Shown: one piece after another, positions 11,986 through 62,046 of the stretch
Layout of the letters: the number at the start of each line of letters is the position of its first letter
Numbering within the stretch: the stretch's first letter is position 1
NCBI GenBank assembly: GCA_044892505.1
Contig: CM097882.1
Coordinates: 100,130,001 to 100,194,000 of the forward strand
DNA length: 64,000 bases
DNA from: Schmidtea nova
Taxonomy: Eukaryota
Direction of reading: 5' to 3'
Program-made: the position numbers and the translations under genes
Notes under the pieces: generated by a model
What the model was told of the DNA's origin: nothing
The model's database searches: none
The model's input: the letters and a program-made list of their open reading frames with translations, nothing else

Positions 11986-11992
11986 GATGAAA

Positions 11993-24593: not shown

Positions 24594-25270
24594 AGTGCAC
24601 AGAGGGTTAAAAATCAAAATCAATATTATATAAAAATTTATGTACCATCTTGTAGAGAATTGATTTTCAAGTAAAATCAAGAATAAATCTCTTGGAAATA
24701 ACTTCGAGCATTTATAAAAACGTTGAGGTGCAGTGTGCAAAATAAAGAATCAATTCTTTTTAACAGAGTTTTCACATCATCAGATAGAACTGCTGGGATT
24801 ATGGGTGGGTTTTAAGTAATTCAAATAAACAATTAATCATACTAGGGATTCCGCGCCCATAACCATACATAACATGACTACTACACGCGTATGCCCTTGA
24901 CTATTCCCTACTAGTCAAGTTGGTACTGCATACGGTGGTGGAAAAATGATGGGCAGGTGAGCTTTGTCGCCAAAACTACTCCCCATTTATCTTCCCTCGG
25001 GTTCTTGCTGCCGATAGAAGGTCTTACGCATTTACATTCTATGGATGTTCGTTTCCTACTGAATTTTATACTACATATCCTTATGATCTATCACACGCTT
25101 TTCCCAATGACGCTCTCCCTCGCTGTTCTACAAGCCTACGAAAACTCTCGCTGCTAAGTAACGGTCGGTGTAGGTTTTACGATGCGATTTTTAGTTCTAC
25201 GAATTACTTATGTAGTCTTATTTTATTTAGTGAAATCACACGATGAGAGAAAAAATTTACACAGTAATAC

Positions 25271-25276
25271 TTTATT
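25271..25276 (-). terminator. Candidate polyadenylation signal in the LTR
   Basis: AATAAA on the minus strand ~45 nt after the LTR ORF-B stop; a similarly placed AATAAA exists in the diverged LTR (2080-2085). The AT-rich context weakens this. Confidence 0.4.
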
Positions 25277-25317
25277 AAAATAATAAAGACAGGTTGTTAT
25301 GTTACATGGAGATTTTC

Positions 25318-25902
25318 CTATTCAAACTCCAGGCTAATCTCCTGGATTAACTCTGCTTCGGTTAAGGAGTTCAGGTGGTGAATTTGTTCGTCCAGGCGCC
25401 TTGCAAATTCTCGGCGACGACGACGCTGTCGCGATCCCATTCGATGTTTTCGAAGCTGTGGGTTTATGACCGGTGCTGACGCTATTGTTCTCGGGGGATC
25501 ACTGGGAAAAATAGGCAAATCTTCCGTTGTAAGAGTGGGTGCCATGATGATTTCCTCTTCCGTCCCGCAAGCGACATCTTGGTGAGTGCATTGTATCCAG
25601 CGCTGAGCCGTGATCGGTCGGATTAGCGCTCGTAATTCGGAGTCGATGTAACTTCTTGTTACTGCGTTCAGGCAATTTCGGAGTTCTCGCTGGACGGCAT
25701 CCAGTTCCAATTTGGTTGTAGCCAATGCTTCCTGCACTCGCTCGAGTTTTTTCGACTGGTCCTTCATCTGTTCGGGCGAGAACCACTTCGCTTTCAATTC
25801 ATCATTGGCGACCGTGAGTCGCTTGATCTGTCGCTGCTGGTCCCTCAGCTTTCTCTCTTGAATTTGTCCCATGATTTTCTTCGAATTTTCTGAAGTCGGC
25901 AT
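25318..25902 (-). CDS. LTR ORF-B, 194 aa: N-terminal coiled coil, Arg-rich basic stretch
   Basis: ATG start, intact in both LTRs, protein-level homolog at 2192-2665, RQRRRRR motif. Confidence 0.8.
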   Translation of the reverse strand: MPTSENSKKIMGQIQERKLRDQQRQIKRLTVANDELKAKWFSPEQMKDQSKKLERVQEALATTKLELDAVQRELRNCLNAVTRSYIDSELRALIRPITAQRWIQCTHQDVACGTEEEIIMAPTLTTEDLPIFPSDPPRTIASAPVINPQLRKHRMGSRQRRRRREFARRLDEQIHHLNSLTEAELIQEISLEFE

Positions 25903-26218
25903 GTTGTCTGAAGATTATAACGATAAATTCACTGGAGGGCCTATCAACAATGTTATTTTATTTAAACAACTATTATTATTATTAAACGAGATGTATATTA
26001 ATGTTTTTAATTGTTGAGTTCTCTACAAAATTATTTACATATCTAATCATTGAAGACTCAAAAGGTTTATTGAACTAATTTTATATTAATAAATGAATTT
26101 CCTAATGACTATAACAACTACAATACTAAATCTACAGGACAACACTATTAACAAAACGAACATTTCAGAATTCTTTAAAACATTTATTTAACTTAAAAAC
26201 AGGCGGCCATTGATTCAG

Positions 26219-26695
26219 CTATTCATCCTCGGTCATTTTTCCTCGATACGAAAATACCGAGCGGATCTGCAAATTTGTATGGATTCCTGTGTTATTGGAC
26301 GAGGCCTGCTGGAAACGGATTCTCTCAGCTTCTCGGAGGGGTCGGATGGCTGTATTGAACTTGAACCCCAATTCCTTGAAGGTAGAGGCTGGAATGAACC
26401 CCCAATAAATGACACATCTCGGGAATCCACCTTTGTCCAACATCATGATGAACCAGGCGGCGTGCCATGATTCGTATTCCTCGTCTGGAATGATTGGCCA
26501 ACTAGCGCATCCCCGGTACCATACGTGGTGCCGTGGATGGTCCCATACTGTAAATGGACAGGCGGTTTCGAGCTCTCGGCGCCATGCCCACATCTTTTGG
26601 TGAATTTGCTGTAAAATCTCGAACGGAGCCGGCTTTAATGGGCTAACTCGGGCTCGTTCTTGTCGTTTTTTGATAGTGTATCTATGCTTAGCCAT
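26219..26695 (-). CDS. LTR ORF-A, 158 aa, unknown (Trp/His-rich)
   Basis: ATG start, intact in both LTRs, disrupted homolog at ~2880-3350. Confidence 0.75.
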   Translation of the reverse strand: MAKHRYTIKKRQERARVSPLKPAPFEILQQIHQKMWAWRRELETACPFTVWDHPRHHVWYRGCASWPIIPDEEYESWHAAWFIMMLDKGGFPRCVIYWGFIPASTFKELGFKFNTAIRPLREAERIRFQQASSNNTGIHTNLQIRSVFSYRGKMTEDE

Positions 26696-27782
26696 GATTC
26701 CAAAACGATGCTGAATTTTATAATAGTTACAATTTACATCAATAATTAATCATAGTAAATGTTATCTCTCATCGTGATTCCTTTATTATTTGCCTTCCCC
26801 TTAGACCTTAGCTGAAATCAAGAAAAAACTGTTGTTTGTTACAGTATGCATTACTCTCGTGTCTACTTAGATTTATCTGTTTATGATCAATTTGATAGAC
26901 GAAAAATTGATGATTTGTCTGCTTGGATTTTCAAAATATTGGTACCTCAAAACGGAAACTCTCTCCCGTCATGTATCCCTAGTTTATTCGAAAAAACGCT
27001 CTTTTGTACCAAACGCGGTCGACAAAATTTTCCTAAGGTTTATTAGACGTTTATTAAACAGCGGCGCTATGGTGAGGGTGAAAAATTGTGCCTCCTCCCG
27101 GTTAACAACTTCTTTCATATCTTTAAGCTTTATCAAAAAATTCTCGTCCCCTCTGTAGCTAAAATGATCAGAAAATAATTTCCCGGATTTGTTGGGTGTC
27201 CCATGTGCAAGTCTCAACCACTACTAATAAAATTGTGCTTTACTATTTATTACTTTACCGTGTGTGGAGCCCTCGAGCACCACGCCACGGACGGACACCT
27301 TGGGAACCTAAAGCTCCCAACGGCGCAAAATTAATATGATCATTATATATTTTAATGTTGAGTCTAATCACAATAACGTTTAATTCATATAACAAATTTC
27401 AACACATGAATGCATAAACACATAAATAATTAGATCAATAGATAAATGACAAAGCAAATGACACAATCATGAATAAAATAATACAGAAACCAAAATACCT
27501 AATTCGTCTGGGTTTGCTTCGATCGGTTCGTCTAGAATTCAAAGTCTATTTGATTAGTGAGCTAAATTTTACACTCTCAACTGACGTTGTAAGATTAGGT
27601 ATTAAGTCTGTTTTATCCAAAGTCTGATCAGTATTTATACTGATCAGTCTGATCTAGACTGACCAATCGGATTTGGCCGATTTCATGGTGGGTTTTAATT
27701 ATTGTTTTTGATTCTAATTAATTTTTATTTTTTAGATTGTATTCTTCCTTGGAGGTCCGGGTTTCAAAAACAATTATTCAAT

Positions 27783-28188
27783 AACAAGTACTTTTATTTG
27801 GTTTTAATTATTATTATTTGTATTTTATTTGTTTTTAGATGTCTCCTGGGCCCGTTAATATCTATAAATTCATTTATTTTTATTTATAGCTTGTACTTAG
27901 TTATTCTATATTTTTACTATATTATTCCTTTCTTTTAATAAATAAATATTCCCCTTTTTACCTTATTTTTCTCTTTTTTGTTTTAAACAAGTACTTTTAT
28001 TTGGTTTTAATTATTATTATTTGTATTTTATTTGTTTTTAGATGTCTCCTGGGCCCGTTAATATCTATAAATTCATTTATTTTTATTTATAGCTTGTACT
28101 TAGTTATTCTATATTTTTACTATATTATTCCTTTCTTTTAATAAATAAATATTCCCCTTTTTACCTTATTTTTCTCTTTTTTGTTTTA
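27783..28188. repeat. 203-bp tandem duplication in the U3 end of the LTR
   Basis: aacaagtacttttatttgg...ttttgtttta occurs at 27783 and 27986; the same duplication is in the other LTR (53109-53514). Confidence 0.9.
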
Positions 28189-28440
28189 ATTAATCTACTT
28201 TTATTTCATTTTTTTCTCTATTTGGCTGGCCCAACATCACTCGGGGACCCCTAAAATTGCGTCCCGCAATTAATTATACATTTACACCTATATCATCATA
28301 CATAAAAATTAAGCAGATAAATGTCAATTTACATATACACAAAGAATCACGTAAGGTGATAGATTTTATACGTAAGCACAAAGTCATATTATTGTTAAAT
28401 GTAAGTGGATCATACATAAAGTGAATGTAATATATCAGTT

Positions 28441-29013
28441 TTACACAAGCTCTTTGATTTCATGATTGGTATTGGATTGGATTGGGGTTCTTTCGCTGAT
28501 TGTTCGTAGTTCGTAGTGGCTTTGGATTCGGTTTAGGTGTTTTCTCATTCGCTTTTGGGTTCTGATGTCTTGTATTGTTGTTCGGTTCAGGATGACATGT
28601 TTTTGTTTTAAGATCTTCACTCGGTATGATGTTATGAGGATTGTGATCGCGATAATGGTCACGCTGAGTGCAAGGATTATTATAATTGCGATGATCCATT
28701 TTTCTTGATATTCTATCTCTGCTTGGGCTAAGCTTTTCATGGGTTCTCGACCTTCTTTTAGGGTTTTTCTGATTGTTTTCAATTTGATTCGATGTTCATA
28801 TAGGACCTGTTGAAATTTTTCATCGTTTGGGTTGTCTGATGTTATCTGTTGAAGTTGGGTGATTTCTTGTGTTGCTTCGCTGATTAGTTTATCTAGTTCT
28901 TCATAGGTTTTCTCGGGTAGGGCTCGTAGCTCCTTCTCTGTGAGTTGAAGATCTTCTCTTTGTAGGGTGATTGTTATTAGGTATAGGAATATCGGTATTC
29001 TGAGCTTTTTCAT
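28441..29013 (-). CDS. Accessory ORF, 190 aa, predicted type I membrane protein
   Basis: Signal-like MKKLRIPIFLYLITITLQ, helical/coiled-coil ectodomain, TM WIIAIIIILALSVTIIAITILI, basic tail. Confidence 0.8.
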   Translation of the reverse strand: MKKLRIPIFLYLITITLQREDLQLTEKELRALPEKTYEELDKLISEATQEITQLQQITSDNPNDEKFQQVLYEHRIKLKTIRKTLKEGREPMKSLAQAEIEYQEKWIIAIIIILALSVTIIAITILITSYRVKILKQKHVILNRTTIQDIRTQKRMRKHLNRIQSHYELRTISERTPIQSNTNHEIKELV

Positions 29014-29095
29014 ACTGTTTTCTTTACAGGTAGGTCAATACAATTTGATACTACATTTCATACAATTATTTACAAAAATATATTTTCCGCTTTAT

Positions 29096-30157
29096 TTACA
29101 CAATCGTCTCGTTTGGTTCGTAGAAACCTTCGTCCTGAGGTTCTACCTGGTTCGTGGGGAGTGGTATCCAAACAACCCTGCTCCTCCACATTTCGACTTC
29201 ATCTCGATACATGTGAGATATCTGGATCTCCTCGTCCAGCAAATATTCTAGGTAATTTGCTTGTTCTGTTAATGTTTCTATTTGCTTCTCTAATTCGATT
29301 ACTTTTGTCTTTTGTTCGTCTTCTTTCATCATTTTTGTTACGGCTGCCGTTGTACTTGTTTCTTTGGGTATTGCTAGTACTGTTACTCGTTTCTGTTTCA
29401 ATTCTTCGTTTTCTTTCATCAAATTCGTTAAATTTTCCTCATAACTTTGCTTCGCTTCCTTTAACCTTTCTCTGGTTCTTTTTAGCTCTATTTTCTTCTG
29501 GGTAATCACTCCTTGATAACCATTTATATCTCTCTTCATCTCTTCTTCTTTCTGATTCCATATTCCGGTGAGCATAGATTTCAGTTGTTCTTGATTAGCT
29601 AGTTCTTCTCCCATTCTTTGAACTTGATAGGTTAGTCCTTTAATTTTCTTTGCTTGTTCGCGGATAAATTGCTGTCTTTTTGTATTCCATCTTTTATTTA
29701 ACACTTCCTGGTTGATTTTTTGCTCTAACTCGTCTTTTAGTTCATCGATCTCTTTATATAACTTCCAATCATCACTATAAGCTGTCCTTTCTATTATTTC
29801 TCTAGCTTTTTCGTAAGATTCTTTCGCTTCTTTCTTCCAGTATCTTGCTTGTTCTGTAATCGAATACATCTTGTGTTCAGCTTCCATCTGCTGTCTGTCT
29901 CTTTCCTCTCGTCGCTCTTTCATCATTCTCTGGTAATATTCCTTTTGTTGTTGTAGCATTTTGTATACTTCTTCTATTTTTTCTCGACTTCTTTGACTTG
30001 ATCTTTCCGCTTCTTTTAATAATTCGGCTTGTCTCTCTATCTCCTCTTGCTTTCCATAATATGCATTGACCCATATTTCAATCTGTTCTAGATGATCGCT
30101 AATCGCTTCTGCTTGATGCATCGTAATTTCCTGTAAGCATACTTCGATATTTCCCAT
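29096..30157 (-). CDS. Accessory ORF, 353 aa, long coiled-coil protein
   Basis: ATG start, E/K/Q-rich heptads throughout, no globular motif recognised. Confidence 0.8.
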   Translation of the reverse strand: MGNIEVCLQEITMHQAEAISDHLEQIEIWVNAYYGKQEEIERQAELLKEAERSSQRSREKIEEVYKMLQQQKEYYQRMMKERREERDRQQMEAEHKMYSITEQARYWKKEAKESYEKAREIIERTAYSDDWKLYKEIDELKDELEQKINQEVLNKRWNTKRQQFIREQAKKIKGLTYQVQRMGEELANQEQLKSMLTGIWNQKEEEMKRDINGYQGVITQKKIELKRTRERLKEAKQSYEENLTNLMKENEELKQKRVTVLAIPKETSTTAAVTKMMKEDEQKTKVIELEKQIETLTEQANYLEYLLDEEIQISHMYRDEVEMWRSRVVWIPLPTNQVEPQDEGFYEPNETIV

Positions 30158-30272
30158 TGCTATAATTTCAAAAAAAAATTTTTTAATCGGTTTATATATC
30201 AGTTATTTTTTGTTTATATAATAATTTTTGGGTATTTAACTGTACATATTATTTACACGATCACTTCTCTTG

Positions 30273-31655
30273 TTACGTCAACCATTCTTTTCTATCCGCT
30301 TTCTCATTCCTTTCCATTTCTATGTATAGGGTGTCTGCATATAATCGTTCCCATAGGCTTTCTTTCGTTATAAACATTGGTTCTCCCGCTGCTAATCCAC
30401 ATTCTGTGGTTGGTTTCTCGCTCGTACTCGCATGTTTCTCTGTCTCAAAGAATTTTTCTACTGGTTTTGTTACACTTCTGATTCTAATGATGACTCCTAC
30501 TTTCAAGGGCCATTCTACTAGGTCGTCGTATTCTCCTTTACATAGCGAGAAAAATATTGACACATGTGTTCCTCGTCCTCTTCCGTCTCCATTTGGGTAT
30601 AGCTTCAATCTCACTTTAGCTCCGTTTCTCCATAAATAAAATGGTGGGCTTATTACTGCTGTTTTCGTCATATTTCTGGCCTCTGTTAATTTGTTTCTAA
30701 AATCTGTCACTTTCCACACATATGGTGCGATTGGTAACTTTTCCTCGGTATCCTGGGTGAGTTTGTTGTACTGGATTTTCATTCCTTTAGCCAGTTCTTC
30801 GATAGCTTTTATCTTTTCCTCCATCTTTTCTCGTGTTAGTTCGAATTGCTCTCTGGTTTCCAACAGTAGGTTTACCATTATCTTGTGTGACTCTATTTCT
30901 CTTTCTAATTTTTTGATTGTTTGTTCGGTTTCTTTTGTTGCTTCGTTTGTCATTTCCGCATGCTTTAGTAATGCTTCCTCCAGATGTTGTTTCATGGTTT
31001 TTTGCGTTCTTTTCTCCATACATCCCTGTTTGTTATAAGGACATTCCCTTGGTTTCTCCGTGCACACTTTCCAATGTTCTTGTAATTTTACTTCTACCGT
31101 TATCTCGCATTCGTTTGAACATATTCCTACATATTGTCTACATACTTTCTCCTCTTTTATATTCAGGTGTTCTTCTTCGATCTTTCTCCTCGTTTCTCGA
31201 GTTCCACAATATTCGCATAGACTTTCCTCTTCTTTACATTCATCTTTGTGCTGCTCTTTATTCTTTATAGTTATTTTTTGTTGGCATTTGTTACATTCAG
31301 TTCTCTTCTCTTCGCAGTTCTCCAGATGGTTCTCGAGATCGCGTATTTGTCCTTGCCATATACATGGTTGATTTATACATTCGGTTTTCGTGTTCATGAT
31401 TTCTCTCTGAGTTGCTCTATCTGGTCCGGTTTCTTCGAATTTTATTTGACCTTCTTTGCATTCTGGACATTCTGGTGGTCTTTTCATACTTAACTCGTGT
31501 ATGCATTTGGTACATACTCTGCATCCGCATAGGGTTTGTCTTGGTTTCAATATTATGTTTTTACAATTTACACAAGTGAGTCTCAGACTCCATTTCCTGT
31601 TCTCGGCTCTCAAAATTTCGATTATCCGCTCTTCGGCTTTTCCTTCTGTATTCAT
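30273..31655 (-). CDS. TRAF: Full-length intronless TRAF (RING, TRAF zinc fingers, coiled coil, MATH/TRAF-C), 460 aa
   Basis: RING CVNC..CGCRVC..C..CPEC; fingers such as CINQPCIWQGQIRDLENHLENC; TRAF-C YVWKVTDF..SPPFY..YPNGDGRGRGTHVSIF..GEYDDLVEWP. Confidence 0.95.
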   Translation of the reverse strand: MNTEGKAEERIIEILRAENRKWSLRLTCVNCKNIILKPRQTLCGCRVCTKCIHELSMKRPPECPECKEGQIKFEETGPDRATQREIMNTKTECINQPCIWQGQIRDLENHLENCEEKRTECNKCQQKITIKNKEQHKDECKEEESLCEYCGTRETRRKIEEEHLNIKEEKVCRQYVGICSNECEITVEVKLQEHWKVCTEKPRECPYNKQGCMEKRTQKTMKQHLEEALLKHAEMTNEATKETEQTIKKLEREIESHKIMVNLLLETREQFELTREKMEEKIKAIEELAKGMKIQYNKLTQDTEEKLPIAPYVWKVTDFRNKLTEARNMTKTAVISPPFYLWRNGAKVRLKLYPNGDGRGRGTHVSIFFSLCKGEYDDLVEWPLKVGVIIRIRSVTKPVEKFFETEKHASTSEKPTTECGLAAGEPMFITKESLWERLYADTLYIEMERNEKADRKEWLT

Positions 31656-31745
31656 TCTACAATGATATATACACTTGATTTGTTATCTATTTTTTGATTT
31701 TTCTTGTTTTTGTTTTACATATTTACAATTTTTCGCTTTATTTAT

Positions 31746-32102
31746 CTACGGCTCGTTTGTTGAATCTGGTTCTGGGTCGTTTTCTGATCTGTTTATTGCC
31801 CAATTTGTCCATCCATCCTCTGCTTCTTCTGTCTCTCCCATTGTTAAACGGTCTATCTCTATTGCTTGTCTCTGATTTATGTCGCTCATCACTTGATTCT
31901 CTCTGGTAAGTTGCGTTATCAATCTCTGTTGCTCCTCGATTCTGTGGAGTTGTTCAAAACTATTATTATAACTTTCGGATAACAAATTCTGTTTCTCAAT
32001 TAACTGATTTTGTAGTGAGTTGATTGTTCGTATTAACATGTCACACTGGGCTTTCCATCGCATAGCCATAGTAGTTTCTGCTATTTCTTCCTGTTCGTTC
32101 AT
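31746..32102 (-). CDS. Accessory ORF, 118 aa, coiled coil with acidic tail
   Basis: ATG start, Q/E-rich heptads, collinear with the other accessory ORFs and set between AT-rich spacers. Confidence 0.7.
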   Translation of the reverse strand: MNEQEEIAETTMAMRWKAQCDMLIRTINSLQNQLIEKQNLLSESYNNSFEQLHRIEEQQRLITQLTRENQVMSDINQRQAIEIDRLTMGETEEAEDGWTNWAINRSENDPEPDSTNEP

Positions 32103-32227
32103 TTTCTAAATTATATACATTAATCGTTTTCTCGATTTCTCTTTTTATATTTTTATAATATCGATACCCATACTATTACGGTAATGCATTGTTATTTACA
32201 CTATTATTTACAGTCATATCCCGCCTC

Positions 32228-44200: not shown

Positions 44201-47200
44201 TTTATATAGCCGTCTTTCATCGTGATCCCATAATACATGTTCGTTATATTTCATGATTATGTCATCTTCCCATTCTTCTTCTGGTTCTCTTTGTAATAGT
44301 GTCTCGTTGATGACATTTACTAATTCTTTTATGGTACAATCTGCTACCACTTCAATTTCTTTGGTATCCTCATTAGGCAGTTCCACTGAAATTTTTAGAT
44401 CTGTTATTTTTCCTTGTCTAAACATTGCTTTTCCCATTTTGGCAATTACTTTTCCGTATGAGATCTGTGACCATCTCGTGTGACTTGTGTCACGTATGCA
44501 CTCGATACATCGTTTCAACTTTTCGTATTCGCTTCTCATTAACTCCTTTCTATGTTTTTTGATTTGTGGGATGATTTGTTCTATCATGGAATTTAGATTT
44601 CCTCGTAAGATTCGTCCTTTTTCGTATTCTAACCGTGGTTTTATCTTCCTCTCGAAACACATATTTGCTTCTTTTGCTACTTCTTGTAGGTTCTCTTCTC
44701 TCTTATCATCGCATATCGATAATGTTGTCACCTCTCCTGGCCATATGCCTGTTTCTATCAAATGCGTCCTTTTCTTCACTAGTCCATTCTGTGAATAGAG
44801 GAATTTGTTTTTATATGAACTCCCTAATCTATCTTCTACCCATTGATAGATATCTTCCGTGAGTGGAGTTTTGATCCAAATCCTTGGCAAACATGTTTTT
44901 ATCTCTATTAGGATTATATATTCATGGAGTGGTTCTTTTAATAATTTTCCTACGTATTGGCTTAGTGTTTCTACTTCCCGGCCTGGTAACCACTCTTTAT
45001 AGTTCATTTGTAATATTGCTCTCATGAATTTTCTATAGTGTTTCTTGTCAATGAATTCCTCATTATATATTACTTCTAGCGCGTTATCTAATAATTTCTG
45101 GATCTCGTCCTCTTTTACTTGAATAGTTTCTGGTGTCTTTACTACTTCTATCTTTTTGTCTTCAATTTCCGGTTCGTTTAGCATATCTCCGGCTAGACTA
45201 CTGACGTCACTATCCTCTTCGTCATCTGAGAATTTCTTTGCCTGGCCTCTCAACATGTTAATGTGTTTTATTTGGTTGATTTCACTTGGTGTATTTTCCG
45301 TTGGTCTTGTTTCACTTTTAATAGCTTTTTGTGTTGATTCACTCTTGTCGTCTACTACTCCGACCTTTCTCATTTTTCGTTCTAACTCGTCTATTTCTCC
45401 CAACCGTCTTCGTATCATTTTCCCTTTAAATATTCGACTGATTCGTGTTTCGTGACGCACTGGCGATGGAATTCCTTCTGGTTCTATTTCCTTGATTACC
45501 ATCACATTTCTTTTTGTCTCTACTACTCCCAGGTTTTCCCATGTATCCGTTAGTTTCAATTTTACTTCTGGTGCACCTTCTATTTTTAGGAATGCTTCTC
45601 TGGGCAGTTTCGTTACTCCTGGAGCCATTTCATTCACTTTATTGAACAATATTTCTACTTCTTCTTTTATGTTATATTGGAATCGAAACACGTGCTTGTT
45701 TGGCAAAATTACCATCATTCCTCTTTTCCCGAGTTTCCTTTTCTCTTCTTGGTTCCCTTCTTTTTCTACTTCCTTTTCTGTTTCTTTTTCTGCTTCTTCA
45801 TCTTCTTGTATTATCTCTTTTCGGCCTTCGTTGTTGGTTGGATTCGGGTTTGTTGGATTTATTTCTGGTACAGTCTCTTTCTCGTGGGTATTTGTTTGAT
45901 TGGTTGCTCTCATCATATTAATTCTTAGAGGTTGTCGTTCTCTTTCTTGCTGTTTTTGTTCCTCTTCTCTTTGTATTCTTGCCCATTCCTGAGCATGTCG
46001 TGCTTGACTTTCCCGATTCAATCGTTCGTTTTCGCTTTCTATTTTCCTCATCATATTGATTTGTTGTTGACCTGTTTGCGGATTTCCTCTGGTTGTATTG
46101 TTTATCAGCTCCGTCAATCTTTGGACCTCTTGCATTAAATGTATCTCTTTAGTGGTATTTTTATTTTGGTTATTATTATTACTATTTGGTTGGTTTCCGT
46201 ATTCCGGTTGGTTTCCATTATTTGGCTGATTTCCATAATTCTGTCGATTTCCACCAGTTGGTTGGTTTCCATAGTTTTGTCGGTTTCCGGTATTCTGCCA
46301 GTTTCCTCGTTGATTGCTTCTTTGTCCGCAATTTCTTGATAGGTGTCCAGGCCGTCCACAATTAAAACAGGTTATTGTGTAACATCTGCTCTCTGAATGC
46401 CCTTTTACTCCACATTTTCCACAATTCAAGTTCTGATAACATTCTTGTTGCCAATGTCCCAATTTCCCACATGTTTTGCATTGTTTCGTTGGTCCTTGGG
46501 GGTTGTAATTGTTTTGATTTCCGTAATTTGATACTTTATTCCCTTCATTCCTTCGTTGCGGTGGTGGTCGGTTTAATTGTTGTGAATTTGGAATGTGGTT
46601 ATTCAGGTTCACTTCTTGTTCGTTTTGTGCTGTATCCATAGCTAAATAGATTCTACCATCATTTCCTATCATGTGTAGTTCAAATCTATTAGCTGTTTCT
46701 AGTGCTTGGTCGATGGTTTTACACCCTTGACATCCAACTTGCGCTCTTATGTCGGGTCTTCTTAATCCTCCCACAAAGATAGCTGCCATTAACTCCTCAT
46801 TTATTGGGCTGTCTTGATTAAAGATCAACTTTGCTAACTTTTTCAATTCGCTTGCATATACCGCATTCGATTCATTTATCTTTTGTTTCCTCATTGAGAA
46901 TTCCGTGAATGCCTCATTCAATACTTTATTTATTCCAAAGGTTTGTTGGAAAAAGTCCTTTATCGCTGACCAACTTGTAGGTGGATTAGTTCCATTCTTT
47001 GCTTCCAAATATAGATCTAATGCGCTATCTTTCAAATATAGCTGAATTCTGCTTACAGTTGTTTCTGGTTTCCACTTGCATACTTCCACGAATATGCCAA
47101 ATTCCTTTAAGAAAGTTTCTAATTTACTCGCATCTCCATTAAACGGTTCTCCGGAAAATTTGTCTTTTATCTCTTCTCTTGGTTCACTCATTTCGATTCC

Positions 47201-47617: not shown

Positions 47618-48165
47618 CGGGATTACTTTTGTATACTCAATTTTCCTGTCTTATCGTGTTCCGATTCTTTTCTTCCTTAGTTGATTGGTTTGGTTTGATT
47701 GATTTATCTAAAATACAAATGTCACTTCAACGATACTCTATTGTTATCGTTGCGCTTTTATTCCCTTTTTACGGGACTTCTCATTACTGGGTTTCTATTA
47801 TTTTTCCCCATTCCCAGATTCCCCTTTATTTAAGTCTATTTAAATTATCTATATACTAGTCACAATTATCTATTTAGTCATAACAATTATCTATCGGTTA
47901 TTAAAATACATCAATTATTTTTCCCGCGGTCTCCCAATTTATTTGTCGTTCGAACGCTCTAATTCCCTGAGTCATTTGACTCGATTATTATTTTTTCATC
48001 TCTTTATCTTTCTCTCTGCTAGCCTCTAATTATTAATTCTGCCGGTCTTTCCGGTCAGCTCCTATTTCTCAATTCTACTTGCATGCATTATTTTAGGTCG
48101 CATAATCAGCTTTACTCGCATTTCTCAATTCCTGGTGCGCACTATTCTCATTATCGTCGACGATC

Positions 48166-48381
48166 ACAACTCTGGGCCTATATTCCCTCTGTTGTTATTT
48201 CTTATCACTTGCAACCCTGGGCCTATATTCCCTCCGTTGCTACTCAAACGATTGTAACCCTGGGCTTATATTCCCTCCGTTACTATCTTCCTTTAATTTT
48301 AAATAATTGCAACCCTGGGCCTATATTCCCTCCGTTGCTACTCAACAATTGTAACCCTGGGCCTATATTCCCTCCGTTACT
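48166..48381. repeat. Leader tandem array 1 (5 copies of a 26-bp core)
   Basis: aaccctgggcctatattccctccgtt at ~48168, 48213, 48256, 48311 and 48353. Confidence 0.9.
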
Positions 48382-48427
48382 ATATATCCGGATATCCCTA
48401 TTGGCTCCTTTGGCCTCTAATTAATAT

Positions 48428-48592
48428 CAATTATCTCAAATGGCTCTTATGGCCTCAAATTCATATCTCAACTATCTCAAATGGCTCTATTGGCCTTAAA
48501 TTCATATCTCAATTATCTCAAATGGCTCTATTGGCCTTAAATTCATATCTCAATTATCTCAAATGGCTCTATTGGCCTTAAATCATATCTCT
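48428..48592. repeat. Leader tandem array 2 (4 x 41 bp)
   Basis: atctcaaatggctctattggccttaaattcatatctcaatt starting at 48433, 48474, 48515 and 48556. Confidence 0.92.
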
Positions 48593-48635
48593 CAATAACG
48601 CCTAGCTAGGTCATTCAATATGGCTCTTTGGCCTC

Positions 48636-48851
48636 AACCCTTTGTTTCAAGGGACAAACCGCTGATAACCCTTTGTTTCAAGGGACAAATTCTAATAACC
48701 CTTTGTTTCAAGGGACAACCCGCTGATAACCCTTTGTTTCAAGGGACAAATTCTAATAACCCTTTGTTTCAAGGGACAACCCGCTGATAACCCTTTGTTT
48801 CAAGGGACAAATTCTAATAACCCTTTGTTTCAAGGGACAACCCGCTGATAA
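48636..48851. repeat. Leader tandem array 3 (7 hairpin units of alternating 31/30 bp; 61-bp higher-order unit)
   Basis: aaccctttgtttcaagggacaa at 48636, 48667, 48697, 48728, 48758, 48789 and 48819; ccctt/aaggg is an internal inverted repeat. Confidence 0.93.
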
Positions 48852-49326
48852 CTTTTCCTTAACCGGTTAATCGTAATTCTTAACTTCGCTAGCGACTACA
48901 ATTTCTCAGCTGAGTTCTCTCAATTTCATGCGAGCTGATTATGCACCTCTTATTTTTCTCTATAATTCCTCGATTCTTTGTTTTATTACTAATTCTTTCG
49001 CTGATCAGTCATAATTCAATTTTTATTATTTTCTCTGCGCGCATCTTACCTCCTCAGGGTTTTCCCTATTTCTCTCCCCAACCAAAATATACAAAAAGAT
49101 CGCGTTGGTCTACTAATGCGGGATGTGGTGATCAATCACATCACAAAAGCTTTCCAACATTTGCGATTGGCCCCTTTCTATATACCCCGAGTGGGTTGAT
49201 CAACTGGTACCTCCCAATGGGTGCTTAACGGACTACTTGACAGTAGCTCAAAAATTAATTAACATTGTTGATTGCTCCCTTGACTTTGTCATTCGATACA
49301 ATATATTAACACACTCTAAATATTTA

Positions 49327-49788
49327 TTATAAATAAACTACAATTCTATCAGCTACAGAGAAATTGCACATGGGGCACTCATCACACTTATTCGCACAGT
49401 TTTTACAGAATCGAAAATGTCCGCATGGTAGAAACATTATTTGGATTTCACTGTCTTCGCATATGTAACATTGTTTATATTGTTTTGCTGCTTCGACCCC
49501 TTGTGACATCCATCGGTTATATGTTAGGCTTAACTGCTGTTCTATATGTCGGCATCTGATATTCAACTCGGCATCCTCTAATCGTGCTTTGTACCATTTA
49601 TATCGCGTATTTATATCGAGTTTATTTACTTTCTCTATGATTTTTATTAACTCAGTTGTTTCCTCAGTTTGTGTCGTAGGTTCCTCATATTCGGATGCTC
49701 TTATTCGGGTTATTTTTTCGCAGACTGTCTCAAATGTATCGTTCTCGGTGTTGAAAAATTCCTCGATTTCTTTCAGTTTTTCCTCCAT
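49327..49788 (-). CDS. Upstream accessory ORF, 153 aa, with a C-terminal IAP/MDM2-type RING finger (no BIR)
   Basis: CYICEDSEIQIMFLPCGHFRFCKNCANKCDECPMCNFSVADRIVVYL at the extreme C-terminus; ATG start. Confidence 0.9.
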   Translation of the reverse strand: MEEKLKEIEEFFNTENDTFETVCEKITRIRASEYEEPTTQTEETTELIKIIEKVNKLDINTRYKWYKARLEDAELNIRCRHIEQQLSLTYNRWMSQGVEAAKQYKQCYICEDSEIQIMFLPCGHFRFCKNCANKCDECPMCNFSVADRIVVYL

Positions 49789-50092
49789 TTCCTAGATAAT
49801 TTATTTAATTACTGTGTTAATATTATTCGAAAAGTAGTACTGTGTTTCGTTTCTGACAGTTTTATAGCCTCCCCCCGTGTTTCGGTAAATTGTCGTCCCG
49901 ACCTGTTATTTATGAATGCATTTGTTCAATATATCTACTAATTTGTTTTAATTCCCTGTCTGTAATTATCTATTTCCACGCAACTCACTTTTATCTCGAT
50001 TACTCTTTCGGTTACTATTTCTACTCACAAAATTCTGACTTTAAATTTCTCTGTTGTCATTGGGTTCACCTTTTCCGCATAAAACAAAGTTG

Positions 50093-50110
50093 ATCCCGGC
50101 TGAGCCCCCA
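50093..50110 (-). promoter_or_regulatory. Primer-binding site, tRNA-Pro
   Basis: Minus strand TGGGGGCTCAGCCGGGAT lies 6 nt inside the 5' LTR boundary and matches 16/18 of the MLV tRNA-Pro PBS TGGGGGCTCGTCCGGGAT. Confidence 0.88.
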
Positions 50111-50643
50111 AATTTATGCTGGGATTATGGGTGGGTTTTAAGTAATTCAAATAAACAATTAATCATACTAGGGATTCCGCGCCCATAACCATACATAACA
50201 TGACTACTACACGCGTATGCCCTTGACTATTCCCTACTAGTCAAGTTGGTACTGCATACGGTGGTGGAAAAATGATGGGCAGGTGAGCTTTGTCGCCAAA
50301 ACTACTCCCCATTTATCTTCCCTCGGGTTCTTGCTGCCGATAGAAGGTCTTACGCATTTACATTCTATGGATGTTCGTTTCCTACTGAATTTTATACTAC
50401 ATATCCTTATGATCTATCACACGCTTTTCCCAATGACGCTCTCCCTCGCTGTTCTACAAGCCTACGAAAACTCTCGCTGCTAAGTAACGGTCGGTGTAGG
50501 TTTTACGATGCGATTTTTAGTTCTACGAATTACTTATGTAGTCTTATTTTATTTAGTGAAATCACACGATGAGAGAAAAAATTTACACAGTAATACTTTA
50601 TTAAAATAATAAAGACAGGTTGTTATGTTACATGGAGATTTTC

Positions 50644-51228
50644 CTATTCAAACTCCAGGCTAATCTCCTGGATTAACTCTGCTTCGGTTAAGGAGTTCAG
50701 GTGGTGAATTTGTTCGTCCAGGCGCCTTGCAAATTCTCGGCGACGACGACGCTGTCGCGATCCCATTCGATGTTTTCGAAGCTGTGGGTTTATGACCGGT
50801 GCTGACGCTATTGTTCTCGGGGGATCACTGGGAAAAATAGGCAAATCTTCCGTTGTAAGAGTGGGTGCCATGATGATTTCCTCTTCCGTCCCGCAAGCGA
50901 CATCTTGGTGAGTGCATTGTATCCAGCGCTGAGCCGTGATCGGTCGGATTAGCGCTCGTAATTCGGAGTCGATGTAACTTCTTGTTACTGCGTTCAGGCA
51001 ATTTCGGAGTTCTCGCTGGACGGCATCCAGTTCCAATTTGGTTGTAGCCAATGCTTCCTGCACTCGCTCGAGTTTTTTCGACTGGTCCTTCATCTGTTCG
51101 GGCGAGAACCACTTCGCTTTCAATTCATCATTGGCGACCGTGAGTCGCTTGATCTGTCGCTGCTGGTCCCTCAGCTTTCTCTCTTGAATTTGTCCCATGA
51201 TTTTCTTCGAATTTTCTGAAGTCGGCAT
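50644..51228 (-). CDS. LTR ORF-B copy (194 aa)
   Basis: Translation identical to 25318-25902. Confidence 0.8.
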   Translation of the reverse strand: MPTSENSKKIMGQIQERKLRDQQRQIKRLTVANDELKAKWFSPEQMKDQSKKLERVQEALATTKLELDAVQRELRNCLNAVTRSYIDSELRALIRPITAQRWIQCTHQDVACGTEEEIIMAPTLTTEDLPIFPSDPPRTIASAPVINPQLRKHRMGSRQRRRRREFARRLDEQIHHLNSLTEAELIQEISLEFE

Positions 51229-51544
51229 GTTGTCTGAAGATTATAACGATAAATTCACTGGAGGGCCTATCAACAATGTTATTTTATTTAAACAACTATT
51301 ATTATTATTAAACGAGATGTATATTAATGTTTTTAATTGTTGAGTTCTCTACAAAATTATTTACATATCTAATCATTGAAGACTCAAAAGGTTTATTGAA
51401 CTAATTTTATATTAATAAATGAATTTCCTAATGACTATAACAACTACAATACTAAATCTACAGGACAACACTATTAACAAAACGAACATTTCAGAATTCT
51501 TTAAAACATTTATTTAACTTAAAAACAGGCGGCCATTGATTCAG

Positions 51545-52021
51545 CTATTCATCCTCGGTCATTTTTCCTCGATACGAAAATACCGAGCGGATCTGCAAAT
51601 TTGTATGGATTCCTGTGTTATTGGACGAGGCCTGCTGGAAACGGATTCTCTCAGCTTCTCGGAGGGGTCGGATGGCTGTATTGAACTTGAACCCCAATTC
51701 CTTGAAGGTAGAGGCTGGAATGAACCCCCAATAAATGACACATCTCGGGAATCCACCTTTGTCCAACATCATGATGAACCAGGCGGCGTGCCATGATTCG
51801 TATTCCTCGTCTGGAATGATTGGCCAACTAGCGCATCCCCGGTACCATACGTGGTGCCGTGGATGGTCCCATACTGTAAATGGACAGGCGGTTTCGAGCT
51901 CTCGGCGCCATGCCCACATCTTTTGGTGAATTTGCTGTAAAATCTCGAACGGAGCCGGCTTTAATGGGCTAACTCGGGCTCGTTCTTGTCGTTTTTTGAT
52001 AGTGTATCTATGCTTAGCCAT
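51545..52021 (-). CDS. LTR ORF-A copy (158 aa)
   Basis: Translation identical to 26219-26695. Confidence 0.75.
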   Translation of the reverse strand: MAKHRYTIKKRQERARVSPLKPAPFEILQQIHQKMWAWRRELETACPFTVWDHPRHHVWYRGCASWPIIPDEEYESWHAAWFIMMLDKGGFPRCVIYWGFIPASTFKELGFKFNTAIRPLREAERIRFQQASSNNTGIHTNLQIRSVFSYRGKMTEDE

Positions 52022-53689
52022 GATTCCAAAACGATGCTGAATTTTATAATAGTTACAATTTACATCAATAATTAATCATAGTAAATGTTATCTCTCATCG
52101 TGATTCCTTTATTATTTGCCTTCCCCTTAGACCTTAGCTGAAATCAAGAAAAAACTGTTGTTTGTTACAGTATGCATTACTCTCGTGTCTACTTAGATTT
52201 ATCTGTTTATGATCAATTTGATAGACGAAAAATTGATGATTTGTCTGCTTGGATTTTCAAAATATTGGTACCTCAAAACGGAAACTCTCTCCCGTCATGT
52301 ATCCCTAGTTTATTCGAAAAAACGCTCTTTTGTACCAAACGCGGTCGACAAAATTTTCCTAAGGTTTATTAGACGTTTATTAAACAGCGGCGCTATGGTG
52401 AGGGTGAAAAATTGTGCCTCCTCCCGGTTAACAACTTCTTTCATATCTTTAAGCTTTATCAAAAAATTCTCGTCCCCTCTGTAGCTAAAATGATCAGAAA
52501 ATAATTTCCCGGATTTGTTGGGTGTCCCATGTGCAAGTCTCAACCACTACTAATAAAATTGTGCTTTACTATTTATTACTTTACCGTGTGTGGAGCCCTC
52601 GAGCACCACGCCACGGACGGACACCTTGGGAACCTAAAGCTCCCAACGGCGCAAAATTAATATGATCATTATATATTTTAATGTTGAGTCTAATCACAAT
52701 AACGTTTAATTCATATAACAAATTTCAACACATGAATGCATAAACACATAAATAATTAGATCAATAGATAAATGACAAAGCAAATGACACAATCATGAAT
52801 AAAATAATACAGAAACCAAAATACCTAATTCGTCTGGGTTTGCTTCGATCGGTTCGTCTAGAATTCAAAGTCTATTTGATTAGTGAGCTAAATTTTACAC
52901 TCTCAACTGACGTTGTAAGATTAGGTATTAAGTCTGTTTTATCCAAAGTCTGATCAGTATTTATACTGATCAGTCTGATCTAGACTGACCAATCGGATTT
53001 GGCCGATTTCATGGTGGGTTTTAATTATTGTTTTTGATTCTAATTAATTTTTATTTTTTAGATTGTATTCTTCCTTGGAGGTCCGGGTTTCAAAAACAAT
53101 TATTCAATAACAAGTACTTTTATTTGGTTTTAATTATTATTATTTGTATTTTATTTGTTTTTAGATGTCTCCTGGGCCCGTTAATATCTATAAATTCATT
53201 TATTTTTATTTATAGCTTGTACTTAGTTATTCTATATTTTTACTATATTATTCCTTTCTTTTAATAAATAAATATTCCCCTTTTTACCTTATTTTTCTCT
53301 TTTTTGTTTTAAACAAGTACTTTTATTTGGTTTTAATTATTATTATTTGTATTTTATTTGTTTTTAGATGTCTCCTGGGCCCGTTAATATCTATAAATTC
53401 ATTTATTTTTATTTATAGCTTGTACTTAGTTATTCTATATTTTTACTATATTATTCCTTTCTTTTAATAAATAAATATTCCCCTTTTTACCTTATTTTTC
53501 TCTTTTTTGTTTTAATTAATCTACTTTTATTTCATTTTTTTCTCTATTTGGCTGGCCCAACAGAACTCTGAATTATCATCTATTGTTATCAAAATTAATT
53601 TGACAAAATGTGTTAGTTAATAGGAAAAACAAAATATTTGAATATCACTAATTTTCAAAATGTTTTTTTACGAAAATACGTATGAAGCA

Positions 53690-61569: not shown

Positions 61570-62046
61570 AAACAATGTTCAAACGATATTTAAACAATTT
61601 AGTCTAAATTTCTTGTCATTATTGACAATTTCCAGTAGATTGCACTTGGAGAAAATTTTCATTATTTATTTCACAAATAATATTAATATACATTTATATA
61701 AAACAATAATGTTAATTTAAAATTCATGAAAACAAGAACATAAAATAACCAATTATTATCATCATTATTCTTAATTTTTTTCTTATTATTATTTTAAGAA
61801 AAAAACAATATTAAAAAGAATTTTTAATAAAATGCTCTTTTTATAAATATTTCGTATGTAAATCATGTATGTTAAAGTATTAGTCTAATTTAAAATACAA
61901 TATTATTAAAACAAATTATAACGTTAATTTGTTTGAGGAGTTTCTAAAAATATAATTAATGTATAAGTAAGGATTTCATCATACAATCAAACATGCACAG
62001 CATCATACCATTTATATTTTAATACAAATTACAAAAACGCCTCACA
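61570..62046 (-). repeat. 3' LTR (partial) of the Gypsy element at the right edge
   Basis: Starts TGTGAG right after the PPT; the far end is not resolved before the gap. Confidence 0.5.

What the first reader, a model, noticed from the sequence alone, without database searches (positions are those of the whole stretch)
24791..53562. Giant 28.8-kb intact endogenous retrovirus-like Ty3/Gypsy element with a virus-sized gene set
Seen: 3.4-kb LTRs, TSD, PBS, one 5,129-codon ORF and seven further same-strand ORFs. Known: typical Ty3/Gypsy elements are about 5-15 kb, and giant 'Burro' elements with extra domains were reported in Schmidtea (recalled, not rechecked). Inference: Env, a second surface protein and death/immune modulators make this look like an infectious enveloped retrovirus lineage outside Retroviridae rather than a simple transposon.
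Basis: partly seen in the sequence, partly recalled or inferred. Interest (0 to 1): 0.95.

Follow-up and report, generated by a model that had tools for sequence, protein, structure and literature searches.

The report
Intact giant Burro-type planarian retroelement
This is a complete, very recently inserted 28.8-kb Burro-type Ty3/gypsy retroelement whose single 5,129-codon reading frame carries a viral envelope-like glycoprotein between gag and pol; the structure is real, but this giant family and the idea that it is a provirus are already published.

Summary
Window 24791-53562, minus strand, is one gap-free LTR element of 28,772 bp. It has two 3,446-bp LTRs that are 100% identical (TG...CA), a 4-bp target duplication (GAAC), a tRNA-type primer-binding site and one 5,129-codon ORF. 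There are six further distinct sense ORFs, eight if the LTR duplicates are counted.

The ORF reads Gag (3 CCHC knuckles), a 1,370-aa charged region, a Monjiviricetes-type fusion glycoprotein with its own signal-like segment and membrane anchor (Pfam E 7e-70), then PR, RT, RNase H, IN, ankyrin repeats and a second type-I membrane module. Accessory ORFs encode an IAP-type RING, a full TRAF homologue, a coiled-coil protein and a small membrane protein. Two further ORFs sit in the LTR.

Pol is Ty3-like (390 bits) and not retroviral (about 120 bits).

This matches the published Burro family (GYPSM1; Grohme 2018). Arkhipova and Yushenova (2019) already reported the in-frame env, the apoptosis and ubiquitin domains, and the provirus hypothesis. 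Infectivity is untested.

Possibly new details:
- The alternating signal/anchor layout, which a 40%-identical relative keeps for the envelope module.
- An orphan C-terminal surface module made of four Cys-repeat units.
- Conserved LTR-borne ORFs, one with an arginine-rich tail.

I file it as a new member of a known kind, of moderate interest.

The parts
50117..53562 (-). 5' LTR, 3,446 bp, TG...CA
   Evidence: 100% identical to the 3' LTR
24791..28236 (-). 3' LTR, 3,446 bp
24787..24790 (.). Target-site duplication GAAC, copy next to the 3' LTR
53563..53566 (.). Target-site duplication GAAC, copy next to the 5' LTR
53109..53532 (-). 203-bp tandem repeat (2.1 copies) near the 5' end of the LTR; also present at 27783-28206 in the 3' LTR
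51545..52021 (-). LTR-borne ORF of 158 aa (duplicate at 26219-26695); no Pfam family
   Evidence: Longer than chance. A diverged protein-level copy lies in the left flank.
50644..51228 (-). LTR-borne ORF of 194 aa (duplicate at 25318-25902); coiled-coil-like with an arginine-rich C-terminal tract
   Evidence: 34% identical over 163 aa to the ORF at window 2192-2815(-), E 1e-26.
50089..50110 (-). Primer-binding-site-like 22-mer starting with TGG, six bases after the 5' LTR
   Evidence: tRNA identity not tested
49327..49788 (-). Upstream accessory ORF of 153 aa with a C-terminal IAP-type RING; no BIR domain
   Evidence: Pfam zf-C3HC4_3, E 7e-12. Best PDB matches are XIAP/cIAP RINGs, E 6e-11.
48402..48852 (-). 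Tandem repeats in the 2.9-kb leader (41-nt x4.7; 31/61-nt x7.1/3.6)
32228..47617 (-). Giant ORF of 5,129 codons, uninterrupted; first ATG at 47191
46328..47191 (-). Gag (aa 143-430): Retrotrans_gag-like region plus three CCHC zinc knuckles
42218..46327 (-). Charged 'mid' region (aa 431-1800) with no significant family. It contains a Q/N-rich repeat and three weak ubiquitin-like segments (aa 628-714, 1070-1158, 1350-1422).
   Evidence: Not alignable to the relative L002.
40268..42211 (-). Env-like module (aa 1803-2450). It has a signal-like segment at aa 1803-1819, a Monjiviricetes-type fusion glycoprotein ectodomain with 14 Cys, a TM anchor at aa 2389-2407 and a basic tail.
   Evidence: Pfam PF24664, E 7e-70, profile positions 6-579 of 653. 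Topology. 40.5% identical to the relative L002, with all 14 Cys aligned.
39539..39811 (-). Aspartic protease (aa 2603-2693) with a DTG motif
38399..38875 (-). Reverse transcriptase (aa 2915-3073) with a YIDD motif
   Evidence: Best PDB match is Ty3, E 2e-115.
37823..38212 (-). RNase H (aa 3136-3265)
36983..37498 (-). Integrase: HHCC zinc domain plus rve core (aa 3374-3545); a GPY motif follows at aa 3694
34838..36184 (-). Post-integrase region with two ankyrin-repeat blocks (aa about 3812-3925 and 4141-4260)
32231..34168 (-). C-terminal type-I membrane module (aa 4484-5129). It has a signal-like segment at aa 4484-4501, four tandem Cys-containing repeats of about 90-125 aa (17 Cys, 7 N-x-S/T sequons), a TM anchor at aa 5050-5068 and a 60-aa tail.
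   Evidence: No homologue in 1.84 billion representatives, PDB or Pfam. FN3-likeness is only a weak lead.
30273..31655 (-). Accessory ORF of 460 aa: a full TRAF homologue (RING, TRAF zinc fingers, coiled coil, MATH/TRAF-C)
   Evidence: Pfam. PDB TRAF5/3/2 TRAF-C, E 1e-22, and TRAF6/5/2 RING-ZnF, E 5e-11.
29096..30157 (-). Accessory ORF of 353 aa, highly charged and coiled-coil-like; no family
28441..29013 (-). Accessory ORF of 190 aa: hydrophobic N-terminus, a strong TM segment at aa 107-127 and a basic tail; no family

Best explanation
This is a full-length, very young insertion of a Burro-type giant Ty3/gypsy (Metaviridae) LTR retroelement. The host is most likely a planarian genome; that is inferred from the family and the very AT-rich flanks and was not tested.

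Shown:
- It has every part needed for LTR retrotransposition: identical LTRs, a target duplication, a tRNA-type PBS, Gag with CCHC knuckles, and PR-RT-RNase H-IN with intact signature motifs.
- A complete viral-type fusion glycoprotein module lies in the same reading frame between gag and protease.

Inferred:
- The element is transcribed from the 5' LTR, reverse-transcribed from a tRNA primer and integrated with a 4-bp duplication.
- The 5,129-aa product is threaded through the ER membrane as it is translated. Gag and the mid region stay cytosolic. The internal signal-like segment (T-x-G at positions -3/-1) sends the Env ectodomain into the lumen, and its anchor stops transfer.
- PR-RT-RH-IN-ankyrin then stay cytosolic. 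A second signal-like segment, again with T-x-G, translocates the C-terminal four-repeat ectodomain, which is anchored by the last TM segment.
- Signal peptidase and the element's own protease would then cut out the mature proteins. Spliced subgenomic RNAs are the alternative route of expression.
- The Env-like protein would let particles pass between cells.
- The RING, TRAF and ankyrin genes would act on host ubiquitin, survival and signalling pathways, as reported for the Burro1 B-IAP region.
For: - Anatomy.
- Coding intactness: chance of no stop about 1e-163; other sense frames carry 555 and 284 stops.
- Domains and their order.
- Catalytic signatures DTG, YIDD and HHCC are present.
- Pol is closest to Ty3: 390 bits, against 208 for a caulimovirus-type polyprotein, 120-128 for foamy/MLV and about 35 for HIV.
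- Env: PF24664, E 7e-70, nearly full profile.
- Signal-like and TM segments alternate in a topologically consistent order.
- An independent relative (JGI metagenome contig, L002) is 40.5% identical in Env and 44.9% in PR-RT. It has the same same-frame order (upstream region, Env, PR, RT), keeps the signal-like and TM segments, and aligns all 14 ectodomain cysteines.
- Uniform A-rich composition across all internal genes argues for one long-resident unit and against a chimera.
- Literature: Burro family, in-frame env and provirus hypothesis (PMC6431247); BURRO1 expression and PIWI control (PMC8532177); Burro1 B-IAP function as cited in PMC13465017; GAG-ENV-POL elements in Platyhelminthes (PMC13524379).
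Against: - There is no expression, particle or transmission evidence for this copy.
- The polypurine tract is atypical.
- The fold of the Env module could not be confirmed. AlphaFold gave pLDDT 33 with a two-sequence alignment, and no PDB sequence matched.
- Host species and copy number could not be determined. There were no exact matches on record and two metagenome scans were blank.
- Perfectly identical 3.4-kb LTRs could in principle owe something to assembly polishing.
- The co-translational threading model rests only on hydrophobicity and -3/-1 residues.
- BIR, BCL2 and dUTPase-like motifs reported for Burro were not detected by Pfam here.
Confidence: 0.85

Rival explanations
1. It is an ordinary intracellular retrotransposon. 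The Env-like and second membrane modules are retained for an intracellular role, such as membrane-associated assembly or host manipulation, or are on the way to decay. No cell-to-cell or horizontal transfer takes place.
For: - Env sits in-frame inside the polyprotein and is not a separate, separately regulated gene.
- No transmission data exist.
- The related copy L002 carries 4 in-frame stops in 2,717 codons, so copies do decay.
- According to PMC13465017, the Burro1 accessory region has been tied to a host-beneficial role.
Against: - Two elements only about 40% identical keep the signal-like segment, the TM anchor and all 14 ectodomain cysteines. That indicates long-term selection on a folded, membrane-inserted extracellular protein.
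- The entire Env frame is intact in this copy.
Confidence: 0.3
2. It is an assembly artefact: a chimera or collapsed repeat joining parts of different elements, with the LTRs made identical by consensus polishing.
For: - Zero differences over 3,446 bp.
- The literature says Burro repeats make planarian genomes hard to assemble (PMC11410931).
- N gaps lie in the flanks.
Against: - Matching 4-bp TSD at both ends.
- One unbroken 15.4-kb ORF.
- Uniform composition in all internal genes.
- No N inside the element.
- The Env-PR-RT order is reproduced in an independent contig.
Confidence: 0.04
3. It is a recently endogenised exogenous retrovirus-like agent, not a long-resident genomic family. The copy would then record a new germline or neoblast infection.
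For: - Identical LTRs and all genes intact.
- A virus-like gene set including Env and accessory genes.
Against: - The family is reported in thousands of copies in Schmidtea and across Dugesiidae and Geoplanidae, which fits long residence with ongoing activity.
- A diverged LTR-like remnant carrying homologues of both LTR ORFs lies in the same window.
Confidence: 0.1

Closest known systems
Burro / GYPSM1 giant gypsy-like LTR retrotransposons of dugesiid planarians (Jurka 2007; Grohme et al. 2018; Arkhipova and Yushenova 2019, PMC6431247)
   Same: - About 30 kb in total, with multi-kb LTRs.
- One polyprotein ORF of about 4,900-5,140 aa.
- Gag with CCHC knuckles (three, as reported for S. mediterranea).
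- Env with mononegavirus-glycoprotein similarity, in-frame between gag and PR.
- RING, MATH/TRAF, ankyrin and ubiquitin-like motifs, plus accessory ORFs.
- In the reported D. tigrina element, MATH/TRAF is likewise a separate accessory ORF next to a 5,140-aa ORF1.
   Different: - TRAF lies downstream of the giant ORF here; in D. tigrina it is reported upstream.
- Pfam detected no BIR, BCL2 or dUTPase-like domain.
- The RING ORF has no BIR.
- The passages I could read do not mention the C-terminal four-repeat membrane module, the small TM ORF or the LTR-borne ORFs.
- Nucleotide identity to Burro1-4 could not be tested.
Env-carrying Ty3/gypsy 'errantiviruses' with GAG-ENV-POL order in Nematoda, Bryozoa and Platyhelminthes (PMC13524379)
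   Same: - Gypsy-type pol.
- Env placed between gag and pol.
- Env of a viral fusion-glycoprotein type; that paper groups chuvirus-like and gB-like proteins as class III.
- Young copies with near-identical LTRs.
   Different: - Those elements are described with separate ORFs and conventional sizes; here Env is fused in-frame within a 5,129-codon ORF.
- This element adds about 15 kb of extra domains and genes.
- The Pfam match is to the Monjiviricetes fusion family, not to herpesvirus gB.
Mosquito BEL/Pao and gypsy elements that captured Chuviridae-like glycoproteins (Dezordi et al. 2020, as cited in PMC13524379)
   Same: An LTR retroelement associated with a glycoprotein of negative-strand RNA virus type.
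   Different: A different retroelement superfamily or host, a separate env ORF, and no giant polyprotein.
Complex retroviruses and polyprotein RNA viruses (a functional analogy only)
   Same: - Accessory genes near the 3' end and in the LTR/U3 region.
- An arginine-rich small protein.
- Internal signal and anchor segments alternating along one polyprotein, as in viruses that mature their glycoproteins by signal peptidase.
   Different: - Pol is far closer to Ty3 than to any retrovirus.
- No homology to retroviral accessory proteins was found.
- The analogy rests on my general knowledge and was not tested.

Membership tests
Ty3/gypsy LTR retrotransposon (Metaviridae) | Direct LTRs with TG...CA termini, flanked by a short target-site duplication | tested here: met
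   3,446-bp LTRs, 100% identical; TSD GAAC
Ty3/gypsy LTR retrotransposon (Metaviridae) | Pol domain order PR-RT-RNase H-IN | tested here: met
   Pfam order RVP, RVT_1, RT_RNaseH, Integrase_H2C2, rve
Ty3/gypsy LTR retrotransposon (Metaviridae) | RT/IN closest to Ty3/gypsy references, not to Retroviridae | tested here: met
   PDB search: Ty3 Gag-Pol 390 bits, E 2e-115, against 120-128 bits for foamy/MLV and about 35 for HIV. No formal phylogeny was made.
Ty3/gypsy LTR retrotransposon (Metaviridae) | tRNA primer-binding site next to the 5' LTR and a polypurine tract next to the 3' LTR | tested here: inconclusive
   A 22-nt TGG... site whose complement ends in CCA lies 6 nt from the LTR. The cognate tRNA is not identified. 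The PPT is not purine-rich.
Burro family | Giant size (internal region up to 25 kb) with a polyprotein ORF of about 4,900-5,100 aa | tested here: met
   28,772 bp in total; 5,129-codon ORF, set against the description in PMC6431247
Burro family | Env homologue located in-frame between gag and protease | tested here: met
   PF24664 at aa 1809-2418, between CCHC (aa 380-430) and RVP (aa 2603) in one frame
Burro family | Accessory RING, MATH/TRAF and ankyrin domains | tested here: met
Burro family | BIR, BCL2-like and dUTPase-like motifs (reported for Burro1-4 / HHpred) | tested here: not met
   No Pfam hit at E up to 1 in any tile or accessory ORF. Pfam is less sensitive than the HHpred used in the paper, and these motifs vary between reported family members.
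Burro family | Sequence relatedness to Burro1-4/GYPSM1, and a planarian host | not testable with these tools
   No planarian genome or Repbase entry was reachable. The only relative found is a metagenome contig.
Class III viral fusion glycoprotein (rhabdovirus G / gB / chuvirus-like) | Sequence membership in a viral fusion glycoprotein family, with a signal peptide and a C-terminal TM anchor | tested here: met
   PF24664 at 236 bits against a cut-off of 27. Signal-like segment at aa 1803-1819 and TM at aa 2389-2407.
Class III viral fusion glycoprotein (rhabdovirus G / gB / chuvirus-like) | Class III fold with fusion loops | tested here: inconclusive
   AlphaFold pLDDT 33 with a two-sequence alignment. 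No PDB sequence hit.
Retroviridae | Pol clusters with retroviral RT/IN; env is a separate 3' gene expressed from spliced RNA | tested here: not met
   Pol is closest to Ty3. Env is in-frame upstream of pol. Splicing was not testable.
Infectious enveloped virus | Particles that leave one cell and enter another | not testable with these tools
   Sequence only.
Fibronectin type III / Ig-like repeat surface protein (C-terminal module) | Significant match to an FN3/Ig family, or a confident beta-sandwich model | tested here: inconclusive
   Four internal repeats share C-W, Y-E-[IL]-C, C and P columns. Only sub-threshold hits were found: fn3_5 and Fn3_ELFN at E 0.08 and the contactin-4 FN3 region at E 0.86. 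AlphaFold gave pLDDT 36.

The most novel reading that the evidence does not exclude
Burro-type elements may be genuinely complex enveloped metaviruses, not just large transposons. On this reading, one polytopic polyprotein is matured in the ER membrane into a class III-type fusogen and a second, four-repeat attachment-type glycoprotein that has no known homologue. Conserved LTR-borne genes would act as regulators, including a coiled-coil protein with an arginine-rich tail, by analogy with the small regulatory proteins of complex retroviruses. As far as I could see, the second glycoprotein, the threading topology and the LTR genes have not been described.
Probability: 0.2. Interest if true: 0.75.

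Novelty: new member of a known kind. Interest (0 to 1): 0.4.

Why it matters
Burro elements are the largest known LTR retroelements, they make up a large part of planarian genomes, and they have recently been linked to stem-cell survival. An intact copy with zero LTR divergence and every frame open is a clean reference for what an active family member encodes.

Two layout features give concrete, descriptive hypotheses about how a 5,000-aa retroelement polyprotein could yield both cytosolic enzymes and surface glycoproteins. One is the pair of signal/anchor-bounded modules in a single frame. The other is the set of protein-conserved genes inside the LTR.

The main claim, a giant gypsy element with env and host-modulator domains that may be a provirus, is not new.

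Tried and rejected
- Whole-ORF protein search: only two unrelated giant RT proteins.
- First Env-domain search: blank, because low-complexity words swamped the candidate list. The repeat restricted to residues 35-477 found one relative.
- C-terminal module: nothing in 1.84 billion representatives, PDB or Pfam.
- Both AlphaFold runs were unusable: pLDDT 36 and 33. No fold search was therefore run.
- IMG/VR scan: only a 28-residue low-complexity hit.
- Two metagenome scans: nothing.
- Exact look-ups of four accessory proteins: not on record. Copy number and host could not be established.
- Rfam: no hit. tRNA scan: none.
- PDB profile searches for Env and for the C-module repeats: no significant hit.
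- Pfam on the individual repeats: noise only.
- Grohme 2018 and Lee 2026 are not held in the library, and the eLife supplements are not held either.
- The idea that the two membrane modules are paralogues was rejected: no similarity.
- The idea that the flanking gypsy fragments belong to the same family was rejected: only 31-38% identity in pol.

1. In my reasoning I briefly wrote out a generic dUTPase motif pattern from memory.
2. In my reasoning I noted the rough position of one stop in the relative L002, read from the ORF bounds that a tool printed. It is not repeated here; only the count is given.

Full report
**1. Observation**

The element lies on the minus strand of window 24791-53562 and is 28,772 bp long.
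- Two direct repeats of 3,446 bp (24791-28236 and 50117-53562) are identical at every position. The two mismatches first counted are the bases just outside the repeats.
- The repeats start with TG and end with CA, and GAAC flanks them on both sides.
- Six bases inside the 5' LTR there is a 22-nt stretch beginning with TGG whose complement ends in CCA. This is the form expected of a tRNA primer-binding site. The window has no tRNA gene to compare it with.
- The sequence next to the 3' LTR is not a typical polypurine tract.
- No N run falls inside the element.

**2. Coding capacity**

One ORF of 5,129 codons runs from 47617 to 32228, with its first ATG at codon 143.
- The strand's composition (A 0.43) predicts about 362 stops, so the probability of none is about 1e-163. 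The other two sense frames contain 555 and 284 stops.
- Eight further sense ORFs of at least 120 aa exist. Two are LTR-borne and therefore duplicated, leaving six distinct ones.

**3. Domain map of the giant ORF**

| Residues | Feature |
|---|---|
| about 193-286 | Gag (Retrotrans_gag, weak) |
| 380, 399, 417 | three CCHC knuckles |
| 431-1800 | charged region with no significant family |
| 1803-1819 | hydrophobic signal-like segment, followed by T-D-G / A |
| 1809-2418 | Pfam Monjiviricetes_fusion (PF24664): E 7e-70, 236 bits against a cut-off of 27, profile positions 6-579 of 653 |
| 2389-2407 | transmembrane segment, followed by a basic tail |
| 2603-2693 | protease (DTG) |
| 2915-3073 | RT (YIDD) |
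| 3136-3265 | RNase H |
| 3374-3545 | integrase (HHCC plus rve core); GPY motif at aa 3694 |
| about 3812-3925, 4141-4260 | two ankyrin blocks |
| 4484-5129 | second signal-like segment (4484-4501, followed by T-Q-G / M), a 550-aa ectodomain with 17 Cys and 7 N-x-S/T sequons, a TM segment at 5050-5068 and a 60-aa tail |

**4. Accessory ORFs**
- Upstream of gag: 153 aa with an IAP-type RING (Pfam, E 7e-12). The best PDB matches are XIAP/cIAP RINGs at E 6e-11. There is no BIR domain.
- Downstream, 460 aa: a full TRAF architecture. RING and zinc fingers match TRAF6/5/2 at E 5e-11, and the TRAF-C domain matches TRAF5/3/2 at E 1e-22.
- Downstream, 353 aa: a charged, coiled-coil-like protein.
- Downstream, 190 aa: a hydrophobic N-terminus and a strong TM segment.
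- Every internal gene has the same unusual composition (A 0.40-0.46, GC 0.37-0.38). The two LTR ORFs differ, with GC 0.49-0.50.

**5. Class of element**

In a search of solved structures, the PR-IN region matches Ty3 Gag-Pol best (E 2e-115, 390 bits). A caulimovirus-type polyprotein scores 208 bits, foamy and MLV RTs 120-128 bits, and HIV RT about 35 bits. The element is therefore a Ty3/gypsy (Metaviridae) element and not a member of Retroviridae.

**6. A relative**

A restricted search with the Env module found one protein, P0003 (36% identity), on an 8.2-kb JGI metagenome contig, L002.
- L002 has the same order in a single frame: an unannotated upstream region, the Env-like domain, protease, RT.
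- It is 40.5% identical over 639 aa of Env and 44.9% over 539 aa of PR-RT.
- It keeps a signal-like segment directly before the ectodomain and a TM segment after it.
- All 14 ectodomain cysteines of the window's Env align with cysteines in the relative.
- That frame carries 4 stops in 2,717 codons, so L002 is a decayed copy.
- The region upstream of Env does not align between the two elements.

The in-frame, membrane-competent Env is therefore an old and conserved feature, while the mid region is variable.

**7. The second membrane module**

It has no detectable homologue in 1.84 billion representative proteins, in PDB or in Pfam.
- Internally it is four tandem units of about 90-125 aa. They share invariant C-W, Y, C, K, C and P columns, giving the pattern C-W ... 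C ... Y-E-[IL]-C ... C-x-x-Y-x-T-P.
- The only outside similarity is sub-threshold but consistent in kind: fn3_5 and Fn3_ELFN at E 0.08, and the FN3 region of contactin-4 at E 0.86 with a profile of the four units.
- I read it as a repeat-built surface protein, possibly made of FN3/Ig-like beta-sandwiches. That fold assignment is a lead and not a result.
- It is not a paralogue of the Env module.

**8. LTR-borne ORFs**

The 158-aa and 194-aa sense ORFs in the LTR are longer than expected by chance.
- None of 1,000 random sequences with the LTR's dinucleotide statistics reached 194 aa.
- None of 2,000 built from the local GC-richer stretch reached 194 aa either, and only 7 of those 2,000 reached 158 aa.
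- The antisense strand has nothing over 91 aa.
- Both ORFs have protein-level homologues, in the same order, in the left flank of the window at about 2354-3263 (minus strand), with no DNA-level similarity.
- The 194-aa protein is 34% identical over 163 aa to the 207-aa ORF at 2192-2815 (E 1e-26). The match includes the arginine-rich C-terminal tract.

Conservation of protein without DNA similarity argues that these are real genes of this family's LTRs. Their function is unknown. Any regulatory role, by analogy with small basic proteins of complex retroviruses, is speculation.

**9. Mechanism**

Shown: all parts for LTR retrotransposition are present and unbroken, and the insertion is very young.

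Inferred:
- The order of hydrophobic segments is cytosolic Gag and mid region, signal 1, Env ectodomain, anchor 1, cytosolic PR-RT-RH-IN-ankyrin, signal 2, repeat ectodomain, anchor 2, cytosolic tail. This order is topologically self-consistent for co-translational threading of a single polyprotein.
- Both signal-like segments have small residues at positions -3 and -1.
- Expression from spliced subgenomic RNAs is the alternative, and sequence alone cannot tell the two apart.
- The Env-like protein gives a route for transfer between cells.
- PMC8532177 reports BURRO1 as highly abundant and active, enriched in intestine, and de-repressed in differentiated cells when SMEDWI-2 is lost.
- PMC13465017 cites Lee et al. 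(Dev Cell 2026) for a Burro1 RING+BIR region that protects stem cells from apoptosis.

**10. Comparison with what is known**

PMC6431247 describes Burro (Grohme 2018) and its earlier name GYPSM1 (Jurka 2007). It reports:
- more than 30 kb in total and thousands of copies in Schmidtea mediterranea;
- a 4,873-aa ORF1, and 5,140 aa in a Dugesia tigrina element where MATH/TRAF is a separate accessory ORF;
- Gag with two or three CCHC knuckles;
- RING/AIR1, Smc-like, MATH/TRAF, BIR, ankyrin, BCL2-like, SUMO-like and dUTPase-like motifs;
- an env region in-frame between gag and pol that hits mononegavirus fusion glycoproteins;
- the hypothesis that these are integrated proviruses.

PMC13524379 describes GAG-ENV-POL gypsy 'errantiviruses' in Platyhelminthes, Nematoda and Bryozoa.

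The window's element fits this family on every feature I could test except BIR, BCL2 and dUTPase, which Pfam did not detect. Those motifs vary among reported members, and the published work found some of them with the more sensitive HHpred. Relatedness to the named Burro1-4 sequences, and the host species, could not be tested.

**11. Verdict**

- The structure is real and remarkably intact.
- The interpretation as a virus-like gypsy lineage outside Retroviridae is reasonable but already published, and infectivity remains untested.
- Three details may add something: the conserved signal/anchor architecture, the orphan four-repeat surface module and the conserved LTR genes.

Noticed in passing
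window 2192-3263 (minus strand): A diverged remnant carries protein-level homologues of both LTR-borne ORFs, in the same order. The 207-aa ORF at 2192-2815 is intact; the homologue of the 158-aa ORF is not in one piece. There is no DNA similarity to the element. It is probably an old LTR of a related family.
   Followed up: partly
window 62042-63970 (minus strand), running to the window edge: Part of another gypsy-type pol (RT end, RNase H, integrase). It is only 31% identical to the Burro-type pol, so it belongs to a different family.
   Followed up: partly
window 10340-14700: Fragments of a third gypsy-type pol lie on the plus strand (RNase H at 12969-13367; 61% identical to the right-edge element). 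An ORF at 11500-11997 matches calcineurin-like phosphoesterase (Metallophos, E 4e-22).
   Followed up: no
window 1028-1438 (+) and 59456-60214 (-): A DDE_3 transposase fragment and a separate RT fragment. The neighbourhood is a patchwork of transposon remains in very AT-rich DNA (GC 0.17-0.26).
   Followed up: no
window 42218-46327 (aa 431-1800 of the giant ORF): Three segments of about 70-90 aa (aa 628-714, 1070-1158, 1350-1422) look ubiquitin-like and share a P-N motif after the first strand. Only one gives a weak Pfam hit (Ubiquitin_4, E 0.028). A Q/N-rich 36-nt repeat follows the zinc knuckles (46181-46288).
   Followed up: partly
P0001 (protein found): A 6,491-aa metagenome protein combines RT, RNase H and integrase with DNA methylase, 3'-5' exonuclease and NUDIX domains. 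It is an unrelated giant retroelement-like polyprotein, 31% identical over the pol part only.
   Followed up: no
window 47618-50116 (leader): The leader between the 5' LTR and the gag ATG is 2.9 kb. It holds the RING ORF as a first cistron and two blocks of tandem repeats (48402-48591 and 48636-48852). How gag is translated downstream of these is unexplained.
   Followed up: no
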